Below, piece by piece: positions 10,387-57,879 of a stretch of 64,000 nucleotides of DNA. The stretch is taken from contig JBLDXI010000028.1 in NCBI GenBank assembly GCA_047495785.1, positions 310,001 to 374,000 of the forward strand, given 5' to 3'. Position 1 is the first letter of the stretch, and each line of letters opens with the position of its first letter. The DNA is from Lepidodermella squamata (lineage: Eukaryota; Animalia; Gastrotricha). A program made the position numbers and the translations under genes. The notes beneath the pieces are model-generated. The model did not search any database, was not told where the DNA came from, and worked only from the letters and a program-made list of their open reading frames with translations.

Positions 10387-12894
10387 ATGTCCCTTCATTG
10401 GAATAAATTTCTGCTTCTGATCATCATCTCATACTCACACAGCAGTGATGTTGAAAAACGGTTTCCGATGACAATGCAGATGCCTGAGGTGCAATCGGCA
10501 AGCTCTACAGCATCGACGAGGTCGAAAGTACTGCGGATCATCACGCCCGTTTCGTATGGAGGCACGGCCTTACCCCTTGGCCCAACCGTTTTGATCAGCC
10601 AGCAACTAGCTCTTGACTGGCTCCACGGCCAATCGCGATGGCTTCCGAATTATCGTCTGGAATTAGAGCTATTTGACGATGAGGTAAGTTGTGAGTCAGG
10701 TTTGATCTAATGCACCGCACTTTCTGAATCTTCTTAGTCTGATGATGCTGCAATGATCGGCGGTTTGATGTCGAAGCTACTTGAGAACGACGAACTCCCA
10801 AACAGGTTACCTCTGATGGGCCTGGCTGAGTACGCCATGATCAGCCAGCTAGTTACCGCCTACATTATGAAGACTTACGGAACGATAGGGACAAGCACTT
10901 ATCCATTACCTGAAATATTCTTCAAACGGAACAAATTCCCCAACTATGTCTCATTTGGTGAGCGGCAGGACTACTACATGATATCGGTGGCTGAATTTGT
11001 GAGCAGGATGGGCTGGAAACGTGTGGCCTTAATAACAGACACAAATTCCTACAATCAGCTGGTCGAACAGTACCATTTGAACAATCTTGAAGCTAACAAC
11101 ATAACCCTGGCGTATATGGCCAAGTTTAGAGAGACTGCAGATGATGCTTATGAGATGGACTCTACATTCTGGGAGATGAAACAACGCGAACCTCGAATAC
11201 TATTGAACTGCGCCATTAATAGTATTACTGTAGCCTGTTATCTGAACAAATATGGCATGTTTGGCCCTGGTTACGTGATTATTGGGTATTCCTGGACAAA
11301 CTTCGACCACACTACCCCTATTCCAGATATTGTATCGCAATGGTGTACTCGGGAGATGATTCTCCAAGTTCTGCCGAGCACAATTTTCTATGGCGATGCG
11401 CCACTCTCTGATATTTATGGTGCTGATTTCAAAGGCACAACAGGATTGACCAAATTGGAATTTCTAAGCACAGTCAAGTCGGGAGTTGACAACCCCGATC
11501 TCGCGCTAGGGCTAGACTATTGGGGGCCTGCTTACTACGACAAAATAATACTCGTGGGATCTATTCTCAACATAACAGAGTCGATTTTAAACGAGCAAAA
11601 CGAAACGCTCTCAGATTGGACAACAGCCTCGCAGAGATTCAAAAGTAACCCAGGTCGAATTCTGGATGTGATTAAGCGAGCTATAGGTCGGATCAGTTTG
11701 GGTGGCTTGAAAGGTGAATGGAGCTATGACTTGATCAATGACTGGTCAAACGGCTCTATGCCAATCGTTTATACACAGACCCGGATGAAAGGCAACTCTA
11801 CCTACCAAGATGTTATTGGCTACTACAAGTCCAATCAGAAACCGAATAATAGAACCGTCATTTTACGTGACAAGCTCAAATGGTCGACTTCAGGCGGGAG
11901 TGCACCGAAAGACCAGCTCTTTGTTGTATCCCAACAAGAGCCTTTAGTTGCAACTGCAATCAGTTCAACATTTTTCAACATTGCCGCAGTCTTCATATGT
12001 CTTACAACTGGTCTTGCAGTTTCTATTGCGGTGAAACACTGTAAAAAGCAGCAGTATCCATTCGCTTTTTGTGATATCCGAATCCTGGCAGGAAACATCA
12101 TGATGCTGACCAGCATATTTGTGACTCCATTCGGCATCAAAAATGATCCTAGCCTAAGTTGCACCTTTTCGATCGTGCTCGCCGCAATAGGTATATCGAT
12201 AGGTATCGGAACCATTGAAGAAAAATTGAATATAGTTTTGTTGAAACTACGAGTTATCGGTAAGATAAGAGTAGTCCCGTCCAAGCAACTTCTTTTCATT
12301 GCAAACCTATTGATTGTAACCATGGTATGTTATCAACCAATCTCGGCTAAGAAACAACTACTAAGTTACGAATTTTCTAAAACCGACATAAGTTTAGCCT
12401 ATCAATACGAGACGACGGAGTGTGCTGTTGTTGAGTCAATAACCCAATCCCTAGCTTCAACAATCCTTGCGATATTTGCTATCGCTGGGGTTGGAATCTC
12501 ACTGATATCATTAACACTGGCTTCCTTTAAAGTTCAGTCTGTCGTAAAGCGATCTCGAAATTACAGCGATATCGACGCACATTTTCTCGCGGATACCCAT
12601 CGCACTTCACTGTCAGTTTTCATCCTTTTGACTATACTTTTCGCCGGCGTCTTTATTGGTCTGATTGTTGGGTCGAGTAACGCGGCGATGATCGAACTGC
12701 ATGCTTCTATTGTATTCTCGATTGCCACCTTGAATGCTGGGGTAGTGGCAGCCTGTTTGTTTCTGAAAGTTGACCCGGGTATACGCCCATCAACGTCTAT
12801 CCTTGGATTCAGTCGGGGCAGCGGAATTCATCTAACGGCTCGCGATGAGCAGTTATACGCGAACCGAATATCACGGCTATCGCGAAATAACTAA
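10387..12894 (+). CDS. Divergent class C GPCR (GABA-B-receptor-like): signal peptide, Venus flytrap domain, 7TM
   Basis: Exons 10387-10683 and 10738-12894 (54-nt GT-AG intron, phase 0). LPNYRLELELFDD, KFPNYV, MGWKRVALI and YGMFGPGYVII are GABA-B-like VFT motifs. No Cys-rich linker. Seven hydrophobic segments at the C-terminus. Confidence 0.8.
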
Positions 12895-29952: not shown

Positions 29953-31241
29953 TATGCTGTTAGAGTCGATTCTGAGCTCTCAGATTTCTTCTATGTTACC
30001 AGGGGACTAAGACAGGGTTGCCCGTTGTCTCCTTTGCTATTCATAGCGACCTTCAACAAAATTTGCGAAAAAATATCTGCTGAAAAATTAGGCTTTCCTA
30101 TTAGCGAGACCGCAAACAGCGAGACCGCTATGAGCGAGACTGATTTCCTAAATTTACTAGCGTTTGCTGACGACGGAACACTTTTAGGCATGAACCACGA
30201 CGAAATTTCACGACTACTTCACATTTTCGATTTGGCTTGCACCGAATTGGGTCTGAAAATTAACGCGGCAAAAACTCAATATATGATTATTTCTAGAGAC
30301 GAGTCAGCCACTCAAAATTACGAATTGGAATTGAACGGGAAAAAACTTGAAAAAGTGACCAAATTTAAATATTTAGGGAGCATTATTACTAGTGACGGCA
30401 AAATCGATGAGGAACTAAACTACAGAATTTCTAAGGCAGGCAGTGTTTTCGGCGCCATGAATAAATTCATGTGCAACAAAAGTCAGGTTTCCATAGCTAC
30501 AAAACTTAAGGTACTGACATGTGTTATAATACCTACCATCATTTACGCCTGCGAATCGTGGAACATATCGATAGCCCAAGAAAATAGACTAAACACTATA
30601 GAATATCGATGGCTTCGATCTATAGTAGGTGTCCACCTAATGGACTATATTCCAAATATAGACATTCGACTTGCGTTATGCGGAGGTCTCATTGAAGTGA
30701 GCCGCATTGTTGAAAAACAAAGGCTAAGGTATCTAGGTCACATAATTAGGTCACGTGACTATGACGTAGAAGGACTAATACACAAAATATATATTTGGAC
30801 GCCTCCGCTTGGGTGGTTTGCACCCAGAGGTAGACCTCGAACCAGATGGATCAACGGAGTGCATAGAAGCTTAATTAAAGTAGGTCTTACTAAGGAAATT
30901 CGCCGGAAAAAGAAAACCAATAAGAACAATAAGGTCAAGGATAAGAAAAATAAAGCCACCAAGAAACGAGAAAATAGAAAAAATCCCGGCGAAAAGGATT
31001 TTGAGATCAAAATTATTCCCGATGTCCAACTAGCGGAATCGGTTTCTTTTGAAAAAGATGAATGGCGCATGGTTGTTAACTCGATTGAAAATTACGAATT
31101 CTATACAAAAAGCAGAATCCTCGACTGTGGGGGTGGGTGAGGATCATTCTTCGCCTGCCTTCGCCCTCTTCAAAACCGGAAACGGTACACGACGCTCAGT
31201 CCCGAAGAGGATAAATAAAAACATTATTATTATTATTATTA
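29953..31241 (+). mobile_element. 5'-truncated non-LTR retrotransposon (RTE-like), RT C-terminal half
   Basis: Open frame 29953-31140 with GLRQGCPLSPLLF, FADD, KFKYLGS and RGRPRTRW; (ATT)n tail 31223-31240; 13-bp TSD GTTTCCCCTCTAA at 29940-29952 and 31242-31254. Confidence 0.92.
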
Positions 31242-37542: not shown

Positions 37543-39224
37543 TTAACATTGGAGCTTGTGGATCTGGCCAATGCTGACGGGCTCGACAGCCTCGAGCTTC
37601 TGGCCCTTGCGGTCAACGCAGTGGCAAACGGAGCCGATGCATTGGATGGGGTTGTAGCTGCCGAGTTCGTCGCACGAGTAAGTCAGACCGACCATGCCAG
37701 TCTTCATGAAATCAGCCTGAGCACGGGCGCATTCGCAGTCCATCTTCGAGGCGAATCCAACGTTAGCAGAGTGGCCGGTGGGGATGCCCTGGCTGTCAAC
37801 GCACTGGCAGACGGCTTCGCGGCACTGGCGGGGGTGGTACGAGCCATCTTCGAGGCACTGAGGCTTGTGGCGGCCGAGGCACCTCGGGCAGGTCTGCTCG
37901 GAGAGTTCGACCTCACGAGCGCAGGCGCCCTGTTCGACGGCTTGGCGCTTGTCAGCAGCGCAGTTCAAGGTCGAGATCATGTGGATGGGGACGGCTTCGA
38001 TGGCTTCAAGACGCTGACCGACCTGGTCGACACAGTGGCAAACAGAGCCGATGCATTGGACGGGGTTGTAGTTGCCGAGGGCGTCGCACGAGTAGGTGAG
38101 ACCAACGAGGCCAACCATGCCCTTGCGCTGGTAGTCGGCTTGTTTGCGAGCGCATTCTAAAACAGAAAATTGTGATCAATGAATTCGACAAGGCATTTTT
38201 TAATTTTCGGAAGGCATTGATTTAGGGGTCGAGACTCTGAGATTTGCTTACCGCAGTTCATATCAGCAGCCTGGGAAATGTGAGCCGAGACTTCAGTCGG
38301 GCGGCCCTTGGAGTCGACGCAGGTGCAGACGGAGCCAAAGCACTGGCGGGGGTGGTACGAGCCATCTTCACGGCAGACTGGTTTCTTCTGGCCAAGACGA
38401 ACCGGGCCTTGTTCGAGGAGCTCGAGCTCACGGGCGCAGGCTCCCTGTTCAACAGCATCACGACGACGACGGACCAAGCAGCCGCCGAGTTCTTCCTTGC
38501 GCTCCTCGGGCCTTGATCCGAGCGAGTCGATCGGCTTGCCGAAATCGTTGACGCAATAGCAAACGCCGCTACGGCACTGAACACGCTCGTAGTTGCCCAT
38601 GGAATCGCACTGGCGGGTGAAGGCGATCGTCGACGTTTTGTGGTCGTCGCGGTCACGAACGCATTGGCAGTTCATCTGCTGGTGTTGGCCGATGGAGACG
38701 GCGAAGTCTTCGATTTGCTTACCGCGCTTGTCGACGCACATGCAAACAGCTTCGCGGCATTGGACTGGGGCGTAGGTGCCATCTTCGAGGCATTCGGGCA
38801 AATGAGCGCCCATCATACCGTTCTGGATGTCGCGGCTTTTGGACAGGACTTCAGCGTGACATGGGCCCTTGACTAGGGTTTCTGTAATACAAGTTTGATC
38901 GTTAATTTTGAGAAATGTATTTTTTAACTTACCCAGCTTGACACACTGCTTGGTAGCTGGGTGGCACTCGAGGCCCCTTCCGCACTCTTTCTTAGACGGG
39001 GATCCGAGGAGGTTCGAGGCGCAAGATTCGCCTTCGTTCAGTTGTTTAACGCAAGCCGGGCAGCAACCACAGAATCCGCCGTGGATGTCAACGCGACCAT
39101 CGCAAGCTTGGATCTCGAGCATGGCCGAGGAGCAGTCGGCATTGCTGCAGATATCGGGCGTGCAAATGATAGCTGAGCACACTTGCAGGGTGCAAGCAGC
39201 CGCAATTGCTAAGATGAATCTCAT
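37543..39224 (-). CDS. Secreted IGFBP-like domain plus six thyroglobulin type-1 domains (thyropin-like protease inhibitor)
   Basis: Exons 39224-38933, 38881-38252, 38156-37543 (introns 51 and 95 nt). Signal peptide, GFCGCCPACV motif, six QC...CxCVD/N..G modules. Confidence 0.9.
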
Positions 39225-40770: not shown

Positions 40771-43213
40771 CTAAACCTCACGCGGTCTGCCAGGACGACC
40801 CTTGCCAGCAGGCGCCGGTGGTGGAGCTGGGGCGTACACAGGAGCAGCTCTCGGTGTCTTGATGTCCGCCATGCCCTGACGGGTCAAGCGGCTCTGCTCG
40901 GATGGAACTTCAACCTCACGCGGTCTGCCAGGACGACCCTTGCCAGCAGGCGCCGGTGGTGGAGCTGGGGCGTACACAGGAGCAGCTCTCGGTGTCTTGA
41001 TGTCCGCCATGCCCTGACGGGTCAAGCGGCTCTGCTCGGATGGAACTTCAACCTCACGCGGTCTGCCAGGACGACCCTTGCCAGCAGGCGCCGGTGGTGG
41101 AGCTGGGGCGTACACAGGAGCAGCTCTCGGTGTCTTGATGTCCGCCATGCCCTGACGGGTCAAGCGGCTCTGCTCGGATGGAACTTCAACCTCACGCGGT
41201 CTGCCAGGACGACCCTTGCCAGCAGGCGCCGGTGGTGGAGCTGGGGCGTACACAGGAGCAGCTCTCGGTGTCTTGATGTCCGCCATGCCCTGACGGGTCA
41301 AGCGGCTCTGCTCGGATGGAACTTCAACCTCACGCGGTCTGCCAGGACGACCCTTGCCAGCAGGCGCCGGTGGTGGAGCTGGGGCGTACACAGGAGCAGC
41401 TCTCGGTGTCTTGATGTCCGCCATGCCCTGACGGGTCAAGCGGCTCTGCTCGGATGGAACTTCAACCTCACGCGGTCTGCCAGGACGACCCTTGCCAGCA
41501 GGCGCCGGTGGTGGAGCTGGGGCGTACACAGGAGCAGCTCTCGGTGTCTTGATGTCCGCCATGCCCTGACGGGTCAAGCGGCTCTGCTCGGATGGAACTT
41601 CAACCTCACGCGGTCTGCCAGGACGACCCTTGCCAGCAGGCGCCGGTGGTGGAGCTGGGGCGTACACAGGAGCAGCTCTCGGTGTCTTGATGTCCGCCAT
41701 GCCCTGACGGGTCAAGCGGCTCTGCTCGGATGGAACTTCAACCTCACGCGGTCTGCCAGGACGACCCTTGCCAGCAGGCGCCGGTGGTGGAGCTGGGGCG
41801 TACACAGGAGCAGCTCTCGGTGTCTTGATGTCCGCCATGCCCTGACGGGTCAAGCGGCTCTGCTCGGATGGAACTTCAACCTCACGCGGTCTGCCAGGAC
41901 GACCCTTGCCAGCAGGCGCCGGTGGTGGAGCTGGGGCGTACACAGGAGCAGCTCTCGGTGTCTTGATGTCCGCCATGCCCTGACGGGTCAAGCGGCTCTG
42001 CTCGGATGGAACTTCAACCTCACGCGGTCTGCCAGGACGACCCTTGCCAGCAGGCGCCGGTGGTGGAGCTGGGGCGTACACAGGAGCAGCTCTCGGTGTC
42101 TTGATGTCCGCCATGCCCTGACGGGTCAAGCGGCTCTGCTCGGATGGAACTTCAACCTCACGCGGTCTGCCAGGACGACCCTTGCCAGCAGGCGCCGGTG
42201 GTGGAGCTGGGGCGTACACAGGAGCAGCTCTCGGTGTCTTGATGTCCGCCATGCCCTGACGGGTCAAGCGGCTCTGCTCGGATGGAACTTCAACCTCACG
42301 CGGTCTGCCAGGACGACCCTTGCCAGCAGGCGCCGGTGGTGGAGCTGGGGCGTACACAGGAGCAGCTCTCGGTGTCTTGATGTCCGCCATGCCCTGACGG
42401 GTCAAGCGGCTCTGCTCGGATGGAACTTCAACCTCACGCGGTCTGCCAGGACGACCCTTGCCAGCAGGCGCCGGTGGTGGAGCTGGGGCGTACACAGGAG
42501 CAGCTCTCGGTGTCTTGATGTCCGCCATGCCCTGACGGGTCAAGCGGCTCTGCTCGGATGGAACTTCAACCTCACGCGGTCTGCCAGGACGACCCTTGCC
42601 AGCAGGCGCCGGTGGTGGAGCTGGGGCGTACACAGGAGCAGCTCTCGGTGTCTTGATGTCCGCCATGCCCTGACGGGTCAAGCGGCTCTGCTCGGATGGA
42701 ACTTCAACCTCACGCGGTCTGCCAGGACGACCCTTGCCAGCAGGCGCCGGTGGTGGAGCTGGGGCGTACACAGGAGCAGCTCTCGGTGTCTTGATGTCCG
42801 CCATGCCCTGACGGGTCAAGCGGCTCTGCTCGGATGGAACTTCAACCTCACGCGGTCTGCCAGGACGACCCTTGCCAGCAGGCGCCGGTGGTGGAGCTGG
42901 GGCGTACACAGGAGCAGCTCTCGGTGTCTTGATGTCCGCCATGCCCTGACGGGTCAAGCGGCTCTGCTCGGATGGAACTTCAACCTCACGGGGCTTGACA
43001 GGACGACGCTTGCCAGAAGGGGCGGGTTGCGGAGCTGGGGCGTGCACAGGATCAGGTCTCGGTGGCTGGATACGGGTCAAGCGGCTCTGCTCGGATGGAA
43101 CTTCAGCGGAAACCGTGGCGACCTTACGGGTAAAGTTTTGAACATTTTATACAGGGTGCTTTTATACGGCGCAACGAACTTACCAGAAGTACCACAGCGG
43201 CGTAGTGGAGCAT
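40771..43213 (-). CDS. Secreted Pro/Arg-rich tandem-repeat precursor A
   Basis: Exon 1 43213-43184 (MLHYAAVVLL), 61-nt GT-AG intron, exon 2 from 43122 (VATVSA-EVPSEQSRL...). One variant unit, then 15 full and 1 partial 46-aa repeats. Same gene structure as paralog B. Confidence 0.8.
40774..42990. repeat. 138-bp coding tandem repeat, ~16 apparently identical copies
   Basis: Unit encodes TRQGMADIKTPRAAPVYAPAPPPAPAGKGRPGRPREVEVPSEQSRL on the minus strand. Confidence 0.97.
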
Positions 43214-50444: not shown

Positions 50445-51813
50445 ATGAGTCTAGGTCATCCTAATAAAATTCTCGCGAATTTAAGATTATTGCTCGCCTT
50501 TATTATTGGTGTTTTATTGGCTCTTCACATCGATTTATCGGCAAAAATCGAAGTACGATTGTCCAGCGATAATTTCTCGCATCAACGATGTGAGGTCAGT
50601 TTTTTCAACAATTCAGCAACAAATTTCAAATTCACATCAGCCTGATGAAGTGATAGCAAGACGGTCGAAGGCTCGAATTCGAAGGATGAAAGAAATTTGC
50701 GAGATAATTGAGCGGCGAGGCGACCTTTACCAGCCGCTAAAAACTCCGGAATGGCGATTTTTCTCTTGGGCAGCCGCTAACAACATCACTTCAAATTGCT
50801 AGTATGCTTTGTGAAATTTCAAAAATATTTAAATTAATTTTTAATTTCAAATATCAGCTTGCCCGATTTTTGGTGGAACGATCTGGCGATAAATGACAAA
50901 TACAAACTTGTTTACTGCGCGTAAATTCACTTTTATTTTTTTTTTAATTTTTAATTTGTCTGATTTTCTGAATTTATTTAATTTATTTTTACTGATTAAA
51001 GGACTCCGAAGGTCGGTAATACCAACGTCCGGCTTTATCTGAATCACCTAAGTGAAAATCCCGAGATGGAATCCTACCCATACAACCGATCTGAAATGCT
51101 GCAAATTCATCGGCTCGGATCGGGTCTGAAACACTCGCGACGCTTGACCGAATATTCGGTTAAAGAGGCTAAAAAAATCATGGCTACTTTCAAGAAAATC
51201 GCGTTCATTCGCGATCCAGTCGAGCGTGTCGTGTCGTCGTGGCGTGAAAAGTTGTCCACGGCTGAATCAGACGGCATTTGGCGAGATCACTACAAGGTAA
51301 GTATTTCGAAAATTTTCAATTTTCGGTAGCTTTCGAATAAGTATTATTAAAAATTCAATTTTTAAGATAGTTGGTTCAGAGGTGCGGCAAAGAATATGGA
51401 GGAACGCCTCGAAGTCAGAAATCGATATCGGCCTGCCAGTTCGACTCGACGATTTCATCAAGTATTTGAATACTGAAAATTACCCGCGAGAGCTGGAAGC
51501 TCATTGGCGCGGTCAATTGTATCTGTGCCATTTCTGCGCTATCGACTACCATTTTGTTGGCCATTTCGACAATTTAGCGTGTGATTTGGAATATTTTGCC
51601 AGGCAAATTACTGGCAGGAAAAAAGTGCCGAGATTACCGGAGCCATCTGATAAACCAAGAGCTGGAACCGATCGGTACCAGTTTGATACTAATACGAAAG
51701 GTGCGGCTTACTTGGACTTGGAAGCTAGGAAGACGTTGGATCGTGTTGTCGCGAAACATTTTTCAATTGATTATTGGTTTTTAGGCTTGAAAATGCCCAA
51801 TTTTTCGCATTAA
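50445..51813 (+). CDS. Carbohydrate sulfotransferase 2 (CHST8-14 / Sulfotransfer_2 family)
   Basis: Exons ~50445-50594, 50641-50801, 50858-50920, 51002-51296, 51367-51813. 5'-PSB motif LVYCATPKVGNT is assembled across an intron; 3'-PB motif FIRDPVERVVSSWREK; HWRGQLYLCHFC. Confidence 0.88.
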
Positions 51814-52845
51814 AAATCAATATGAATAAGCCATTTTTTGTTTTTGTGAACCCGTTGTAGTGATGGTTCCATTCCCTGGCTCTCTCCGATTTTCCCCCCC
51901 GAAAATTCTATTTCTTTTAGTATTGTGACTGGCAATTTTTCATCATTTTTCATGGAAAGTCGACTCGTCACTACGGATGCTGAACAATAATTTCACACAA
52001 GCGGTGTCATACGTCAATTTGATCCGGCTTGATTGGCGCGTGCTCTGCTGCTTACACACGTGTGCCAATTTCGACCTTTTACTACTTTTAAATTTTACTG
52101 AAAAACGATGCTACGATATAGCCTTGCTTATTCTCTCGCTTTCATTCTGCTTTTTAATTTTGAGGAATTTCGATAGATAAGTTGAGAAGTTCGCTAAATA
52201 TTCCCCGATTTCGATCTAAAAATCATCGCTATAAATCTATATAAATCGTTAGCGTAAATCTATAACTCGGATTTAGGCTTGTTTACATCCATCTCAAGGT
52301 GATATAGGTGACAAGTAAAAAGTCTTTTGCTTTGCCTCTTCATTTGGCTATTTGTGCGCATTTGTGAGATTGGAGCTCATTATTTGCTATTGCGGTTTGA
52401 TGACTTATTTTGATTTTGTTTTATATTGTGTTTAAGGGTGAACCTAATATTTAAGCGCTGATATTCGATATGCAAAACGTATATATTAGTACAAAGAATT
52501 TTTCCAATAAATGCAAATTTTCCTTGAAATCGCTGATCGCATGTTCGCCTCAATATTGTTCTCATTGATTATTTTTCATCGAGAATTTTAAGCTTGAAAA
52601 TGTCTTGAAAAATTCCTTATAGTTTTGCATGAAAATGTATCATTTTGGTCAGCATCAAAATAAAAACCTTGTGATTTCTTTCTACTTTTTCGAAATTTTT
52701 TATTTCACTTTGATTTTATGATTAGGCCTTAACATTATCAGAATTTCCCTCTCAATGAGACGAGTCAGTTATTAATATAACTTATTATTTAATATGGTCT
52801 AATTAGCATATGCGTGTTCAATAATGTGTCCAAATCTTAGGGAAA

Positions 52846-55453
52846 ATGTCCAAATTTACAGGTTGCTTCACATATCTTCAAAAATCAAGGTGAGTTCCTA
52901 AAATCTCCACAATTTACCTGCCGATCCAGATTCCTCGGGCAAATTTCTTTCCATTTTTACGAGCGAACTAAATTTTAAAAATTGAAAAAGGCGTTCGTCC
53001 AAATTTAGGACCTATTATTATATCATGATAGACGATATTATTACTGAAATATTGGATAACCGTGGGCACTGCAGCGACGTTGCAATGGCGGGAATTTGGC
53101 GAGGTTCCGGAAAGTATCACTCCATCGATCTTATAAAATCGGGTGGTTTCGGCGATGTATTCCGTTGCAAGAAAATAGACGCCGACGATACGATTTTTGC
53201 CGCGAAGCGCGTTTACAAGTCTGCGATAGCTGCGTTGACATTGGGACGTCCTAATCTTTGCGAGAAAGTGTGGAAAATGGCACAGAAAGAGGTTGACTTT
53301 TACGCTTCTCTTTTGCTTATTTATGCTGCTCTTTAAACACATTTCAGGCTGAGAACATGCAACACGTTGAATGCAAGAACATTGTCTCGGTGATCGAGTC
53401 TTTCGAAGGTTAGCTTTATTGGAAAGTTTATCAATAGGATTATTTTAAAAATTGACGTGTCAAATGACAAATGGGCAATAAAAATGTAGGCTCGCAGCAC
53501 GATTTCAGGGCAAAATTTGCCTTACAAAATAAACAAAATAAACTGAACGTCTGCTTAAAATTTGAGGAATCATGCCAAAATTCATGGAAAAAACAATGCC
53601 GATTGTGACAAGACGCAGACCGAAACGGCGAAAAACAGGCATGCTAAAAGGGCTATATTGCAAATAGCCACATTTTAGACCTTAGAATTTAGAATCCTGC
53701 CTAAAACTCGTTAAAATTTGACCTATAAAATTCACCCAGTTTTATGCGCAGTCCTTCGTAGAGATTCAGGATTCAATTAGAAGCGATTGTAGTTCTGTCG
53801 ATAAGCTAAAGTTTATTCATTTTAGAATAATTCGCTCAACGTTTTTACCAGTGATCTGAATTTTGAAATTGTTGAATTTTCGGTTTTTACAAACGAAAAA
53901 CGAGGTTACGAAAACGCGTAGCCATTTTTCCACTTGAAAATAAAATAGTTTTTGGTGAAGTACAAGGGCCCTAAAATTGATATTGGGAAAAGCTCGAAAA
54001 TCGACCTAATTCTAGTTCTAACCGCCCTAGCCCCCTAACCCCAGTTCCTAATCATCGGTTTAGAAAAAATATCCGAAAAGTTGCCTTGTTGATCATTTGT
54101 GTTAGGTGCCAGCTTTTGATTTGAAATTTGGTGCAGCTAAATGTTGATTTCCGAAAAATTCTAAGAATTTTTGGCAACGAATGATTTCTATAGTGAATGC
54201 TACGTCTTGCACAGACTTTCACGCTGAACTTTAAAATAATGTATTTAAAATTATACGATGGTCTATTTTAATATCTCTGGATATTCTGAAAAGTGGTCTC
54301 AGGCCCAAAAAATATTGCGAAATTTAGTTCCGCTTACAGCTAATTTGGTTCCGGTACAGGAGGACCCGTATTATGTTTTTAAATTAATTTTGAAAGCTAT
54401 TAACCTCGGCCCCCATGACACGGCCTGGTCTGAAAAATATTGTCTTGTATTTCAGAAAATAGCGTGGATGGGCCTGTTTTTTACATTATTATGGAATACT
54501 GCGAGGACGGGTCGTTGCGAGATGCCATCAATGAGATGAGGGCGAAAAATGAGCGATTCTCGATGCTGACAATTCAATCTTGGTCGAAGCAGATGATAAA
54601 TGCGCTCAACTTTGTTCACAAACGCAACCTGGTGCATCGGGACATCAAGCCTGATGTAAGTTCGAGAAGTTTTCATTTTAAATACTGTGCAGCAAAGATT
54701 CAATTACCTATAACCCTGAAAGAAAGGAAAAGGGTAACCGGCCAATAATAGATTGTACATAGTATAGATCTCCGAAATTACATTTTTTACAACATTTATA
54801 GCCCCTTTGAGAAGTATGAGCATGTGCAAGTTGTTTCCGTCTGTGGAATAGCGCTAATCGGATTGTTAGCATCAAAGAGGATAAGAAAATTGGATAACTA
54901 GATTTTAACCTTTTCCGTAATCGTTTCATTCAATTCGCTTCATTTCCATCTTATTACTGTTTTCATATTCAATCTATCAGAATATCTTTCTTTGTTCGAG
55001 ACGCCGCGTGATCAAGCTGGGAGATTTTGGGCTGGCGAAAGATAAAACTGAGTAAGCCGCTTGCATTCAGATTACAATAGCATGTGAATTATTGTCTACG
55101 ATCTACGAAAGGGTCACTGATACATTGGCTGGCACTCTTGCTTACTTTGCACCGGAATTTGCGACTGGTTCAATTTATACTTTGAAATGTGATAATTGGT
55201 CGCTGGGAGCTACAATTTATGAGCTTGTTTCTCTCGACATGGAGGTTGGAACTCTTATTTTTTATAAAAATCTTGTGTTTGATTGCAAGAAATTGCTTAG
55301 TTCAAGTCACCAAAAAAGGCATCGGAATTTGGCTATCGCGATGCGGAAAACTTGGATGACTTGCTGATCAATTTGATGAGGGAGAAGCCGGAGCAGCGAT
55401 TCACCATGTCACAAGCATCTGGACATCCATTCTTAAGTATAATAATATCTTGA
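52846..55453 (+). CDS. Ser/Thr protein kinase (NEK-like, family uncertain)
   Basis: Exons 52846-52889, 53009-53291, 53348-53408, 54456-54655, 54981-55051, 55112-55244, 55301-55453. Motifs SGGFGDV, FAAK, IIMEYC, HRDIKPDN, KLGDFG, GTLAYFAPE, DNWSLG, PEQRFT...HPFL. Confidence 0.88.
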
Positions 55454-55731
55454 ATTTCTTTGATACAAGGAGGAAAGTTCCATTGCCCCATTTTTTCTTC
55501 CCGTTATTGAGCTTGGAACCTTCGAAACCGCCGTGCACTGATTGGTCAGCTTGTCACTTTTTCAAACCTGACTTCGGTCTTGGGTGCAAAGCGTAGGCTG
55601 ACTAACTGCGGGCGGCATTGTCAATTAAACGAAGTTGACATATTCGAAATTTTGATGCTTCCTCGAATATAACAACGAAACCTATCTAAAAATCTCAATT
55701 ATTATGGAGTGTCGCGGGAAATGCATGTGAA

Positions 55732-57588
55732 ATGGGGATAGAACGCTTTCTCATTTCTCAGTCGATAATTTGTAAACCCTCTGTCGTTGCAGCCTTGCAG
55801 TACGTTGTTCTCATCGGAGCGACAGGTAGCGGGAAGACAACGATTGCCGAGGGATTGATTGGCCGTGAATTGGAGGCGAATGAGACTCGCGATTGTGCCG
55901 TGAGCGTTACAACTGAAACCACTGTTTATGGAATGCCGCTGTTCGACTTCGCCGACACGCCTGGTTACGAGCCTATGGACAAAAGGGTCGAACACGCCAT
56001 ACACATTGCTAAAGCGCTATGCTACCGGCTTGTGACGCGAATCTTCATTATTTGCAAGTTTGACAACCGAATCGATAGAATGGTTCGAGACGTCGAGACC
56101 GTAGTCGATCCTATGGCAGAAGACCTGGAAGATAACATGACCATCATGGTGACACATTGGGATCACGCCGACAATTTGCGGACGAGCTCAGCCGATCTTG
56201 AAGGAAAGATTCGGTCTACGATGCTGCATCGCTTCAATATCAAAAGCGTCGTGTTTGTTTCCAAATTGAATACAAATTACGAGCAGGTCATAGGCGAATT
56301 TATCGGCCGAGACGACCTGCCTGGTGCAAAGGAGATCAACATTTCCGTCGACAATCTTTCTCGCTACTTCGACTTGAAGAAAAGTGAACGGGGAATTTTG
56401 AGATCGGCCCAGGAAATGAATGAAAAAGCGAACGTTTTCGTCAGCTGCGTGATGGAGAAGTTGCAGTCAATTGAGGACATTTTCGACAGGCAGGATTTTA
56501 TGTTTTCAATGCTGAAGGAAATACGAAGCTATTGTGATGAACTTGTCCAACGGTTTGTGGATGAAAACGGGCTGGACGCCAATCATTTCGATGATTACTT
56601 CTGGTACGAGAAGGTTCGAGAGGAACTTAACGCCATCATTAATGGTTACTTCGCCCATTGCCAGCAATTCAGGAGCTATTTGACGGACAGTCTTGATAAA
56701 GAGCATCCCTTTCGAAAGTGCCCTCACTGTGGGTTGATATGGACTCAGGTTCAAGGTTGCAACAATTCGACGAATTGTGGCGCCGTTCCAAGAGGCGATT
56801 CAGTGCGATTAATTTCCCGCTGGAATAGCGACGGCAGATCTTTCTTTATTCGAAGAACTGAGCCTCCAGTCGTTACACATGTTCAGACGAAGAAGCTGGA
56901 GTTCCGCAGGCGGCAGCTCGAAAGTATCAAAGTTGAAAGTTATAAAGAAATTTTCAAATTTCTGCTGGATGATGCGGACAAGTACGACGTCGAAGAATTA
57001 AGGCGACAAGTAATCGAAGTTGTCATGGCACACGATCTCCACGAAATCTGGATTTACATTTTGGCCGAGCTCATCGCTGTTAGGGCAGGGTTAATTCTGA
57101 GTGACAACCGTCCCACCTCGTATTTGTTCGGATATTTGATTGATAAAATGTTTTCACTTCCACTAACTAACGAAAGTCTGCTCTTTTTATGTGAATTTGT
57201 TAGTTTATTGGACGGTAAATCTGATAGCATCGATGCTTTGAGCGGTTTCAGTAATTGGATGTCAGCCCTGAAGCCCATTGGCCAGCGCCAGCAACAGCTC
57301 AGACGTGCATGTGCGGCCCTCAAAACTTTCGACGTAAAGTTGGACTTGATCGAAAAAGGATATGGTTGTGATGAGCCTATCAGGTGGGATGAGATGGCTA
57401 TCGTTAGCATTCCCGCCGACTTTTTCGACATGACTGAGCTTGAACTCAAACGAGCTGTCTCGTCTATTTCCATTTCAAATCCGGGCGTGGATGCCCACGT
57501 GAAGGAGACATTGGCGCAACGAATTGACCAGTTAAAGGTCAATCTCTGTGAATTCGGCAACAGGCCACCTGCAGCCGACATTGCTTGA
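55732..57588 (+). CDS. Intronless P-loop GTPase (AIG1/GIMAP/G-domain-like) with a C-terminal Cys-rich motif
   Basis: G1 GATGSGKT, G2 SVT, G3 DTPG, G4-like THWD; KCPHCGLIWTQVQGCNNSTNCG; 618-aa open frame. True start uncertain (may be a terminal exon of the kinase). Confidence 0.85.
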   Translation: MGIERFLISQSIICKPSVVAALQYVVLIGATGSGKTTIAEGLIGRELEANETRDCAVSVTTETTVYGMPLFDFADTPGYEPMDKRVEHAIHIAKALCYRLVTRIFIICKFDNRIDRMVRDVETVVDPMAEDLEDNMTIMVTHWDHADNLRTSSADLEGKIRSTMLHRFNIKSVVFVSKLNTNYEQVIGEFIGRDDLPGAKEINISVDNLSRYFDLKKSERGILRSAQEMNEKANVFVSCVMEKLQSIEDIFDRQDFMFSMLKEIRSYCDELVQRFVDENGLDANHFDDYFWYEKVREELNAIINGYFAHCQQFRSYLTDSLDKEHPFRKCPHCGLIWTQVQGCNNSTNCGAVPRGDSVRLISRWNSDGRSFFIRRTEPPVVTHVQTKKLEFRRRQLESIKVESYKEIFKFLLDDADKYDVEELRRQVIEVVMAHDLHEIWIYILAELIAVRAGLILSDNRPTSYLFGYLIDKMFSLPLTNESLLFLCEFVSLLDGKSDSIDALSGFSNWMSALKPIGQRQQQLRRACAALKTFDVKLDLIEKGYGCDEPIRWDEMAIVSIPADFFDMTELELKRAVSSISISNPGVDAHVKETLAQRIDQLKVNLCEFGNRPPAADIA

Positions 57589-57879
57589 TATTATGAGCTT
57601 TCAATTTGACCTATTGCTTGCAAGATTGGATTATATTATGGACTGTGACGTTGCCAACACTTACATTCTGAAAGTGCTAGAAGCTATTCAGAGCATTCTT
57701 TTTCTCAATTTTTCGTTTTTTCCTGTCAAGTTTCAAGTTCTAATAATAAGTTATCACGAATAAAGCTGTAAACTATGTTTTGTTAATTTGTCGATATTTT
57801 TTCGTATGAGTTCGAAACTTTAAAAGGTTGAAGCTGCCGCGCAACTGGTGAAATTATTGATACCAGGCGATACCTTCTT

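What the first reader, a model, noticed from the sequence alone, without database searches (positions are those of the whole stretch)
52846..57588. Possible spliced kinase-GTPase fusion gene
Seen: right after kinase subdomain XI (HPFL) there is a phase-1 donor A|GTATAA (55437), and a phase-1 acceptor TCGTTGCAG| (55792) lies just before the GTPase beta-1 strand, giving ...HPFL-T-LQYVVLIGATGSGKT in frame. Unspliced, the kinase stops five codons later in AT-rich, intron-like sequence. Inference: a ~900-aa kinase + AIG1-like GTPase + Cys-domain protein, distinct from Roco (no COR domain).
Basis: partly seen in the sequence, partly recalled or inferred. Interest (0 to 1): 0.8.

Follow-up and report, generated by a model that had tools for sequence, protein, structure and literature searches.

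The report
Expressed kinase-GTPase fusion gene confirmed
A spliced cDNA contig shows that this animal gene joins a complete protein kinase, in frame and with no linker, to a GIMAP-like GTP-binding protein ending in an unstudied five-cysteine module, giving one protein of about 887 residues whose domain combination has been reported only in passing.

Summary
The predicted junction is real. One 2,791-nt intron-less contig from a public cDNA-like run lies on the window with no mismatches and six GT..AG joints. One joint is exactly 55436^55793.

The joint is phase 1 on both sides and reads HPFL-T-LQYVVLIGATGSGKT. The product is 887 aa from ATG 53025.

- **Kinase:** complete, with all catalytic motifs present.
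- **C-terminal 597 aa:** belongs to an uncharacterised eukaryotic family with 304 representative clusters, including Paramecium and Physarum. Members are normally stand-alone, about 450 aa. They have a TRAFAC G domain closest to GIMAP/AIG1, Era and FeoB, a helical bundle, and a module with five near-invariant Cys. This protein keeps all five, around a roughly 145-aa insertion.

None of 20 long relatives carries a kinase, and none lies within 10 kb upstream of a relative with genomic context. A snail paper (PMC7053062) reports one N-terminal Pkinase-AIG1 gene model, so the architecture class has a precedent.

Likeness to the RBR Rcat domain is weak. There is no COR domain, so this is not Roco.

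Earlier notes of this scan report similar fusions at other loci of this genome. I did not check them. Function is inferred only.

The parts
52846..52889 (+). Unverified and doubtful.
   Evidence: Not covered by the cDNA contig, which starts at 53074. It is in frame with 53009 by arithmetic. However, an X2 haplotype contig has T>A at 53015, making TAA in this frame upstream of ATG 53025.
53009..53291 (+). Exon with the likely start codon ATG 53025. Holds a roughly 30-aa N-terminal leader and kinase subdomains I-II (KSGGFGDV, FAAK).
   Evidence: cDNA contig from 53074, joint 53291^53348. Pkinase profile positions 1-37. Translation. The second haplotype has an in-frame 3-nt insertion after 53035.
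53348..53408 (+). Exon holding kinase subdomains III-IV.
   Evidence: cDNA joints 53291^53348 and 53408^54456, both GT..AG. Translation.
54456..54655 (+). Exon holding kinase subdomains V-VIb and ending in HRDIKPD.
   Evidence: Pkinase E 2.1e-13, profile positions 73-127. cDNA joints.
54981..55051 (+). Exon holding the catalytic-loop Asn and the DFG motif (NIFL...KLGDFGLAK).
   Evidence: Pkinase profile positions 128-147. cDNA joints. Translation.
55112..55244 (+). Exon holding the activation segment (TLAGTLAYFAPE) and subdomain IX (DNWSLG).
   Evidence: Pkinase E 2.5e-07, profile positions 155-192. cDNA joints.
55301..55436 (+). Last kinase exon, subdomains X-XI (EQRFT...GHPFL), with a phase-1 donor A|GTATAA.
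   Evidence: Pkinase profile positions 226-263 of 263. cDNA joint 55436^55793. Phase bookkeeping.
55437..55792 (+). The 356-nt intron removed in the fusion transcript. It holds the read-through stop (55451-55453), an ATTAAA at 55624, and ATG 55732, which opens the 21-codon in-frame leader of the long ORF. That leader may be a relic of, or an alternative to, a stand-alone start.
   Evidence: Skipped in the X1 contig, and no X1 contig covers the intron. Motif positions. ORF 55732-57588.
55793..56334 (+). Start of the last exon. G domain with G1 GATGSGKT (55816-55839), switch-I Thr, G3 DTPG (55954-55965) and G4-like THWD (56152-56163).
   Evidence: MMR_HSR1 26.9 bits against a cut-off of 21.9. 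Near-invariant family columns. pLDDT above 90. Fold matches to GIMAP7, Era, FeoB and Toc34. hhalign to an AIG1 domain at 97.9%.
56347..56694 (+). Helical bundle that follows the G domain in all family members.
   Evidence: AF2 helices 185-300 with pLDDT about 90. Aligned across relatives. No Pfam family.
56707..56799 (+). First part of the five-Cys module: FRKCPHCGLIWTQVQGCNNSTNCG (Cys at 56719, 56728, 56758, 56776).
   Evidence: C309, C312, C322 and C328 are invariant or near-invariant in 71 sequences. Coordinates.
56800..57354 (+). Lineage-specific, mostly helical insertion inside the Cys module. The module spans 246 aa here against about 100 aa in most relatives.
   Evidence: Alignment gap in relatives. 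Module lengths. Low pLDDT of 45-70. No Pfam family. Atlas feature scores at chance level.
57355..57588 (+). Second part of the Cys module (GYGCDEPIRWDEM, fifth Cys at 57367), the C-terminal helices, and the stop codon at 57586-57588.
   Evidence: G524, C525 and W531 are near-invariant, and G526 is Asp here. pLDDT 87-89. BLASTP second segment to P0001.
57589..57764 (+). 3' UTR. The cDNA contig ends at 57738, and an AATAAA lies at 57759-57764.

Best explanation
**What is shown.** This is one protein-coding gene of an animal genome. Its mature mRNA joins seven or more exons.
- Six short exons encode a complete, apparently active Ser/Thr protein kinase.
- A 356-nt intron is removed, so the kinase's last motif (HPFL) runs through one split codon (Thr) straight into strand beta-1 and the P-loop of a G domain.
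- The protein is 887 aa from ATG 53025.
- The downstream 597 aa are a full member of an uncharacterised eukaryotic family. Its members have a GIMAP/AIG1-like TRAFAC G domain, a helical bundle, and a roughly 100-aa module with five conserved Cys. Elsewhere they are stand-alone proteins of about 450 aa.

**Inferred origin.** A stand-alone GTPase gene lying downstream of a kinase gene was captured. An acceptor inside its own 5' leader came into use. The old ATG at 55732 and its 21-codon leader are still open, inside the intron.

**Inferred mechanism.** The G domain has DTPG-Tyr rather than a catalytic Gln. It also has a near-invariant Arg next to the position of the AIG1 conserved-box Arg. Such domains, like GIMAPs, are expected to dimerise or oligomerise when GTP is bound. 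With no linker, that would bring two kinase domains together for trans-autophosphorylation of the activation-loop Thr residues. GTP binding would therefore switch kinase output within a single chain. The helical and Cys (probably zinc-binding) part would be the targeting or partner-binding end. An immune or stress-signalling role is plausible but untested.
For: **Fusion transcript.** One unbranched X1 contig with six GT..AG joints includes 55436^55793 and has 0 mismatches. There is no X1 coverage of the introns. Frame and phases were verified.

**Complete kinase.** The exons hit Pkinase colinearly over profile positions 1-263. The motifs GGFGDV, AAK, HRDIKPD|N, DFG, APE, DNWSLG and the subdomain-XI Arg are all read directly.

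**Family membership of the C-terminal part.**
- 304 representative clusters at E<=1e-3, the best at 4e-55.
- All near-invariant columns are kept apart from G526 (Asp here) and the unchecked R92: P-loop, T39, D54/P56/G57, D123 and the five Cys.
- The AF2 model built with the alignment has pLDDT 78 and pTM 0.70.

**GIMAP-like fold.**
- Foldseek top hits are 3zjc, 2xtn, 3lxx and 1h65.
- The Atlas shape search returns ciliate clusters plus GIMAP/AIG1 clusters.
- hhalign to an AIG1 domain gives 97.9%, with THWD aligned to THGD.

**Relatives are stand-alone.**
- In-frame stops lie upstream of the Met in L004, L006 and L003.
- None of 20 long relatives has Pkinase.
- No kinase exons lie within 10 kb upstream in L008.

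**Precedent for the architecture class.** Pkinase-AIG1 gene Bg690 in Biomphalaria (PMC7053062).
Against: - The RNA evidence is one assembled contig from one run, which the tool labels 'RNA? (a guess)'. Contigs cannot give isoform ratios, so kinase-only or GTPase-only transcripts could coexist. The intron holds a stop 5 codons in, an ATTAAA at 55624 and an ATG at 55732.
- X1 and X2 carry different organism codes.
- The 5' end is not defined, because the contig stops at 53074 next to an adaptor-like tail.
- The mechanism is entirely by analogy. No nucleotide binding, dimerisation, zinc binding or kinase activity was tested.
- The joined protein was not folded, so no kinase/G-domain interface was examined.
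- By VIA Z-score the G domain is no closer to GIMAP7 (16.2) than to Era (16.8) or FeoB (15.7).
Confidence: 0.8

Rival explanations
1. There are two genes that are mostly expressed separately: a kinase ending HPFLSIIIS* and a stand-alone GTPase starting at ATG 55732. The 55436^55793 junction would then be a minor read-through or conjoined transcript.
For: - The read-through stop lies 5 codons after the donor, and an ATTAAA lies at 55624.
- The long ORF has its own ATG 21 codons upstream of the acceptor.
- All relatives examined are stand-alone proteins with short leaders.
- Contigs drop rare variants and cannot give isoform ratios (notes).
Against: - The only X1 contig on the locus runs unbranched from kinase exon 2 to the 3' UTR through the junction.
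- X1 has no contig over 55437-55792. Comparably abundant alternative ends would be expected to break or branch the contig, although this is my inference about the assembler.
- The junction is exactly in frame and places beta-1 three residues after the kinase.
- An open 21-codon stretch upstream is not unusual by chance, at about 0.36.
- Earlier notes of this scan report the same architecture in several paralogues. I did not check them.
Confidence: 0.12
2. The junction is an artefact. Either the X1 contig is an assembly chimera, or it derives from a processed retrocopy in DNA rather than from mRNA.
For: The run's kind is only guessed to be RNA. The contig carries a 26-nt foreign tail. The organism code differs from that of the genomic run.
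Against: - A k-mer assembly cannot invent a joint that falls exactly on GT..AG borders and keeps the frame.
- All six joints are canonical, with 61 nt or more on each side, and there are no mismatches.
- The tail resembles a SMART-type cDNA adaptor. This is my recollection, with one mismatch.
- X1 lacks any intronic or intergenic coverage of the locus, and its word share of 0.52 is about the exonic fraction.
Confidence: 0.03
3. The fusion is real, but the kinase is a regulatory pseudokinase or scaffold, and the output is the Cys module acting as an Rcat-like ubiquitin-transfer domain.
For: - The motif CPHCG-x3-W-x4-GC-x5-CG recalls the first zinc site and the 'GC' catalytic Cys of the RBR Rcat domain. 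This is my recollection, and also note s1-405039.
- Five Cys are conserved, which leaves one spare if a single zinc takes four.
- IBR or IBR_1 is hit by 2 of 41 module sequences, at E 0.014-0.11.
Against: - All kinase catalytic motifs are intact.
- The module profile finds no PDB sequence at E<=10, so no parkin, HOIP or HHARI.
- The commonest weak Pfam hits are generic zinc ribbons: UPF0547 in 10 of 41 and Zn_ribbon_3 in 7 of 41.
- No second zinc site and no RING1 or IBR lie upstream.
Confidence: 0.05

Closest known systems
Stand-alone G domain / helical bundle / five-Cys module proteins of protists and some animals (for example Paramecium tetraurelia A0CEG8 = P0018, a Physarum polycephalum transcript = P0007, and many metagenomic or transcriptomic ORFs). 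Uncharacterised, and no Pfam family covers the C-terminal two thirds.
   Same: The C-terminal 597 aa align over the G domain, helical bundle and Cys module at 19-35% identity, with E down to 4e-55. The conserved residues tabulated are kept, except G526, which is Asp.
   Different: Relatives are about 440-460 aa and have their own Met and a short leader. Here the leader is replaced by a whole kinase, and the Cys module carries a roughly 145-aa helical insertion. A few relatives, such as the Paramecium protein, also have insertions at that site.
GIMAP/AIG1 GTPases, including the N-terminal Pkinase + AIG1 gene model Bg690 of Biomphalaria glabrata (PMC7053062), said there to be 'also known from Atlantic salmon or fungi'.
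   Same: - Same order of domains, kinase then G domain.
- G-domain fold and motifs: DTPG followed by a hydrophobic residue, and THxD as G4.
- An Arg next to the conserved-box Arg position.
- Helices packing behind the G domain.

   Different: This protein does not reach the Pfam AIG1 threshold. It carries the five-Cys module, which GIMAPs lack. The snail gene is only a domain annotation with no functional data. I did not compare sequences with Bg690.
Roco proteins and DAPK1 (LRRK2, Dictyostelium Roco kinases): a kinase and a GTPase in one chain.
   Same: A single chain combines a Ser/Thr kinase with a regulatory G domain. The working model (nucleotide state and dimerisation control the kinase) is borrowed from these proteins.
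   Different: There is no COR domain. Roc is only a sub-threshold match, at 17.5 bits against a cut-off of 27. The G domain belongs to the GIMAP/Era side of the TRAFAC class. The kinase is N-terminal and directly abuts the G domain. There are no LRR or ankyrin repeats.
RBR E3 ligase Rcat (RING2)/IBR domain.
   Same: Local motif likeness only: CPxC, about 9 residues, GC, 5 residues, C.
   Different: No significant profile match to PDB or Pfam IBR. There is one probable zinc site instead of two, and the fifth Cys lies 60-200 residues downstream.

Membership tests
Eukaryotic protein kinase (Pfam Pkinase, PF00069) | Colinear match to the whole catalytic-domain profile | tested here: met
   Searched exon by exon, the exons cover profile positions 1-37, 73-127, 128-147, 155-192 and 226-263 in genomic order. 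The best exon has E 2.1e-13. Single exons other than exon 4 are below the whole-protein cut-off, because they are fragments.
Eukaryotic protein kinase (Pfam Pkinase, PF00069) | Catalytic residues: Gly-rich loop, beta-3 Lys, alpha-C Glu, HRD...N, DFG, APE and the subdomain-XI Arg | tested here: met
   Read directly in the exon translations: SGGFGDV, FAAK, QKE|AE, HRDIKPD|N, DFG, APE, DNWSLG and EQRF. Activity itself was not tested.
G domain / helical / five-Cys family (unnamed; Paramecium A0CEG8-like) | Significant full-length similarity over the G domain, helical region and Cys module | tested here: met
   phmmer against 1.84 billion representatives gave 304 hits at E<=1e-3 and 112 at E<=1e-10. 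Typical matches cover query residues 2 to about 335. The second knuckle also aligns.
G domain / helical / five-Cys family (unnamed; Paramecium A0CEG8-like) | Five conserved Cys (CPxC, GC-x5-CG, GCG) and the W/G/T positions around them | tested here: met
   C309, C312, C322, C328 and C525 are all present. Each is Cys in 69-71 of 71 sequences. G526 is Asp here.
AIG1/GIMAP (Pfam PF04548) | Match to the AIG1 profile above the curated cut-off | tested here: not met
   AIG1 is not among the matches at E<=1 for this protein, which matches only MMR_HSR1. Twenty of 71 relatives match AIG1 at E<=1e-3.
AIG1/GIMAP (Pfam PF04548) | AIG1-type motifs (THxD in place of NKxD, conserved box after beta-4) and homology to a bona fide AIG1 domain | tested here: inconclusive
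   hhalign of the family profile against the AIG1 domain of P0149 gave probability 97.9% and E 4e-13 over 159 columns. THWD aligns with THGD. The near-invariant R92 falls one column from the AIG1 'DRFT' Arg. Other TRAFAC GTPases might score similarly, and I did not run that control.
AIG1/GIMAP (Pfam PF04548) | Closest solved fold is GIMAP or Toc | tested here: inconclusive
   Foldseek ranks GIMAP7, GIMAP2, GIMAP4 and Toc34 at or near the top. VIA Z-scores tie Era (16.8), GIMAP7 (16.2, longest alignment at 189 residues), FeoB (15.7) and Toc34 (14.9).
Roco (ROC-COR) proteins | COR domain following the Roc G domain | tested here: not met
   No COR family appears among the Pfam matches at E<=1 over the 597 aa. 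Roc scores 17.5 bits against a cut-off of 27. The region after the G domain is the family's own helical bundle.
RBR Rcat/IBR | Match to IBR profiles or to solved RBR sequences, and two zinc sites | tested here: not met
   The module profile (41 sequences) finds no PDB sequence at E<=10. IBR or IBR_1 is hit by 2 of 41 sequences at E 0.014-0.11. Only five conserved Cys are present.

The most novel reading that the evidence does not exclude
The kinase-G domain-five-Cys proteins would form a lineage-specific, multi-copy class of single-chain innate-immune or stress switches. In this class a GIMAP-like GTPase oligomerises on a target recognised by the helical/zinc part, and so directly fires an attached kinase. 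Functionally this parallels Roco and RIPK-type signalling, but it is built from an unstudied GTPase family that is shared with ciliates and slime moulds.
Probability: 0.2. Interest if true: 0.75.

Novelty: new variant of a known kind. Interest (0 to 1): 0.55.

Why it matters
Natural kinase-GTPase single chains such as LRRK2 and DAPK1 are important models for how nucleotide state controls a kinase. This gene gives an independent solution, supported by a transcript. It has no COR domain and no linker, and its G domain is GIMAP-like.

It also offers a functional handle on two poorly understood things:
- what GIMAP-like GTPases actually signal to;
- what the widespread but unnamed G domain / five-Cys family does.

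If the paralogues noted elsewhere in this genome share the junction, the family would be a compact system for testing GTP-gated kinase activation.

Tried and rejected
- **Word-index protein searches.** These were nearly blank: no hit with the whole 597 aa, one hit with residues 1-345, and two P-loop-driven hits with the alignment. The family became visible only in the exhaustive search.
- **Single-sequence AF2.** Useless, at pLDDT 40. The model built with the alignment was good.
- **The search for related loci in metagenomes.** It found nothing with the single protein.
- **PDB sequence search with the 597 aa.** Only chance-level FeoB P-loop hits.
- **Kinase subfamily assignment from single exons.** Not possible. 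The best hits were mixed: CDPK, GCN2, ULK1, NEK1 and Aurora.
- **The insertion (residues 336-520).** No Pfam match and only chance-level Atlas scores.
- **Bacterial promoter/terminator scan of the intron.** Irrelevant to a eukaryotic gene.
- **Paralogues in the window.** tblastn found none.
- **Operon or trans-splicing reading.** I considered a nematode-style operon and rejected it, because the cDNA shows cis-splicing from the kinase donor.

Full report
**Observation**

The window is animal DNA. Its neighbours include genes with ANF-receptor, thyroglobulin type-1 and Sulfotransfer_2 domains, and its introns are short with GT..AG ends.

- The exon 55301-55436 ends ...EQRFTMSQASGHPFL plus one base, followed by GTATAA.
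- Read through, the frame gives SIIIS and a stop at 55451-55453.
- TCGTTGCAG ends at 55792.
- The split codon A|CC is Thr, followed by LQYVVLIGATGSGKT, in frame with ORF 55732-57588.

**RNA evidence**

The look-up of sequencing runs returned two holders:
- X2 is genomic, with 0.99 of the sampled words.
- X1 dates from 2015, is labelled 'RNA?' as a guess, and holds 0.52 of the words. That is about the exonic share of the stretch.

Laid on 52800-57800, X1 gives a single 2,791-nt contig with no mismatches or gaps. It lies on 53074-53291, 53348-53408, 54456-54655, 54981-55051, 55112-55244, 55301-55436 and 55793-57738.
- All six skipped pieces are GT..AG.
- The last joint is exactly 55436^55793, skipping 356 nt.
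- X1 has nothing over the introns or upstream of 53074.
- X2 covers everything and shows no joints.

The 26-nt foreign tail before 53074 looks like a SMART-type cDNA adaptor. That is my recollection, with one mismatch. If so, 53074 is a library end, not the transcript start.

The junction therefore exists in spliced RNA. Because the contig runs unbranched through it, the fused form was probably the main one in that library. That last step is my inference about how the assembler behaves. The tool itself warns that contigs cannot give isoform levels.

**Gene model**

That first exon is not covered by cDNA. A second, 90-95% identical X2 contig, presumably the other haplotype, bears on it:
- It carries T>A at 53015, which makes TAA in that frame just upstream of ATG 53025.
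- Its 1-nt insertion lies in the putative intron.
- Its 3-nt insertion after 53035 keeps the frame.

I therefore prefer ATG 53025 as the start.

**Kinase half**

Searched exon by exon, by reference, the exons match Pfam Pkinase colinearly from profile position 1 to 263. The translations show a complete set of catalytic motifs: SGGFGDV, FAAK, HRDIKPD|N, DFG, APE, DNWSLG and the subdomain-XI Arg.

Single exons hit many kinase groups about equally: CDPK, GCN2, ULK1, NEK1 and Aurora. I assign no subfamily.

**GTPase half**

The 597 aa after the junction match only MMR_HSR1 in Pfam. The score is 26.9 bits against a cut-off of 21.9. AIG1 and COR do not match, and Roc is sub-threshold.

The word-index search was blank. 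The exhaustive search of 1.84 billion representatives found 304 relatives at E<=1e-3, the best at 4e-55. Most are 440-460 aa and align to residues 2 to about 335. Named members come from Paramecium tetraurelia (A0CEG8, 'G domain-containing protein') and Physarum polycephalum. The Atlas adds ciliate and cnidarian clusters.

A 71-sequence alignment has these near-invariant positions:
- the P-loop;
- T39 in switch I;
- D54, P56 and G57;
- R92;
- D123 of the THxD motif;
- the motif C309-P-x-C312...W316...G321-C322...T326-x-C328-G329;
- much later, G524-C525-G526...W531.

This protein keeps all five Cys. The module spans 246 aa here against about 100 aa in most relatives, so roughly 145 aa of low-confidence helices are inserted between the fourth and fifth Cys. 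The insertion has no detectable relatives.

**Structure**

With the alignment, AF2 gives pLDDT 78 and pTM 0.70, with values above 90 over the G domain and helical bundle.
- Foldseek's best PDB matches are GIMAP7, GIMAP2, GIMAP4 and Toc34, followed by FeoB, atlastin, GBP and IRG.
- The Atlas shape search gives the ciliate clusters and then GIMAP/AIG1 clusters.
- By VIA Z-score, Era (16.8), GIMAP7 (16.2, 189 residues aligned), FeoB (15.7) and Toc34 (14.9) are effectively tied.
- The family profile aligns to a bona fide AIG1 domain (P0149) with hhalign probability 97.9%. THWD falls on THGD, and R92 falls one column from the AIG1 conserved-box Arg.

'AIG1-like' is thus a fair description, but strict membership is not shown.

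The Cys module on its own (a 41-sequence profile) finds no PDB sequence at E<=10. It gives only sub-threshold zinc-ribbon hits, with IBR in 2 of 41 sequences. The Rcat likeness noted by the first stage (s1-405039) remains a motif-level resemblance.

**Is the fusion found elsewhere?**

- The closest relatives have their own Met with in-frame stops upstream.
- One of them, P0006, carries an N-terminal CBM_20 domain instead of a short leader.
- None of the 20 relatives long enough to hold a kinase has Pkinase. They are tandem P-loop proteins or have unannotated extensions.
- A 50-kb contig with a relative has no kinase exons within 10 kb upstream.
- In the literature library, only the Biomphalaria AIG survey reports an N-terminal Pkinase + AIG1 gene (Bg690), 'also known from Atlantic salmon or fungi' (PMC7053062).
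- Earlier notes of this scan list several kinase-GTPase-Cys fusions at other places in this same genome: s1-384359 and s1-421484 on this piece, and s1-404925 and others elsewhere. I could not read those loci, so this stays a lead. If it is true, the fusion predates a local gene-family expansion.

**How it probably works (inferred)**

The relatives are stand-alone. The ORF still has an ATG (55732) and an open 21-codon leader inside the intron. The simplest history is therefore capture of a downstream GTPase gene by an upstream kinase gene, through use of an acceptor in the old leader.

Functionally, the G domain has a hydrophobic residue instead of a catalytic Gln after DTPG, plus a conserved Arg. 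By analogy with GIMAP2 and GIMAP7, from my knowledge of that literature, such G domains dimerise or oligomerise on GTP binding. With only three residues between kinase and G domain, that would juxtapose kinase domains for activation-loop trans-phosphorylation. The helical bundle and the probably zinc-binding module would provide targeting.

None of this was tested.

**Limits**

- There is one contig from one run, and its organism code differs from that of the genomic run.
- The 5' end is undefined.

**Verdict**

The gene is a new variant of a known kind, the kinase-GTPase single chain: a kinase fused to a member of an unstudied GIMAP-like GTPase / five-Cys family. Its function is open.

Noticed in passing
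window 52865-53086: The genomic run X2 holds a second contig 90-95% identical to the window here, presumably the other haplotype. It has 11 substitutions, a 1-nt insertion at 52953 and an in-frame TAT insertion after 53035. Its T>A at 53015 creates TAA upstream of ATG 53025.
   Followed up: partly
window 55732-55792: Inside the removed intron, the long ORF stays open for 21 codons back to an ATG (MGIERFLISQSIICKPSVVAA...). The stretch KPSVVAALQYVVLIG loosely resembles the leader of the stand-alone relative P0004 (LPLVVTVPYVVLVG). It may be a relic of the ancestral start or an alternative first exon. No X1 contig covers it.
   Followed up: partly
window 40771-43080 (- strand), GC 0.65: A 769-aa ORF with no Pfam match lies in a 2-kb island of 65% GC, within a window that is about 40% GC overall. 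The first stage also noted it (s1-404906).
   Followed up: no
window 30025-31140 (+): An ORF with a reverse-transcriptase (RVT_1) match at E 5.6e-09, probably a retroelement fragment.
   Followed up: no
window 51066-51813 (+), 38160-39224 (-), 10753-12894 (+): Neighbouring genes: a Sulfotransfer_2 carbohydrate sulfotransferase directly upstream on the same strand, a protein with three thyroglobulin type-1 repeats, and a 713-aa single-exon ORF with an ANF_receptor ligand-binding domain.
   Followed up: no
L003 (Logan contig, protein P0006): One close relative of the GTPase / five-Cys family carries an N-terminal CBM_20 starch-binding domain, so the family accepts different N-terminal fusions.
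   Followed up: no
P0009 (812 aa): A relative matches the query's Cys-module region (residues 301-345) in six separate stretches, so it appears to hold tandem copies of the module. It has no Pfam family at E<=1e-5.
   Followed up: no
runs X1 and X2: The cDNA-like run and the genomic run carry different organism codes, yet the X1 contig is 100% identical to the window. Possible reasons are a naming difference or a mixed or cobiont sample.
   Followed up: no
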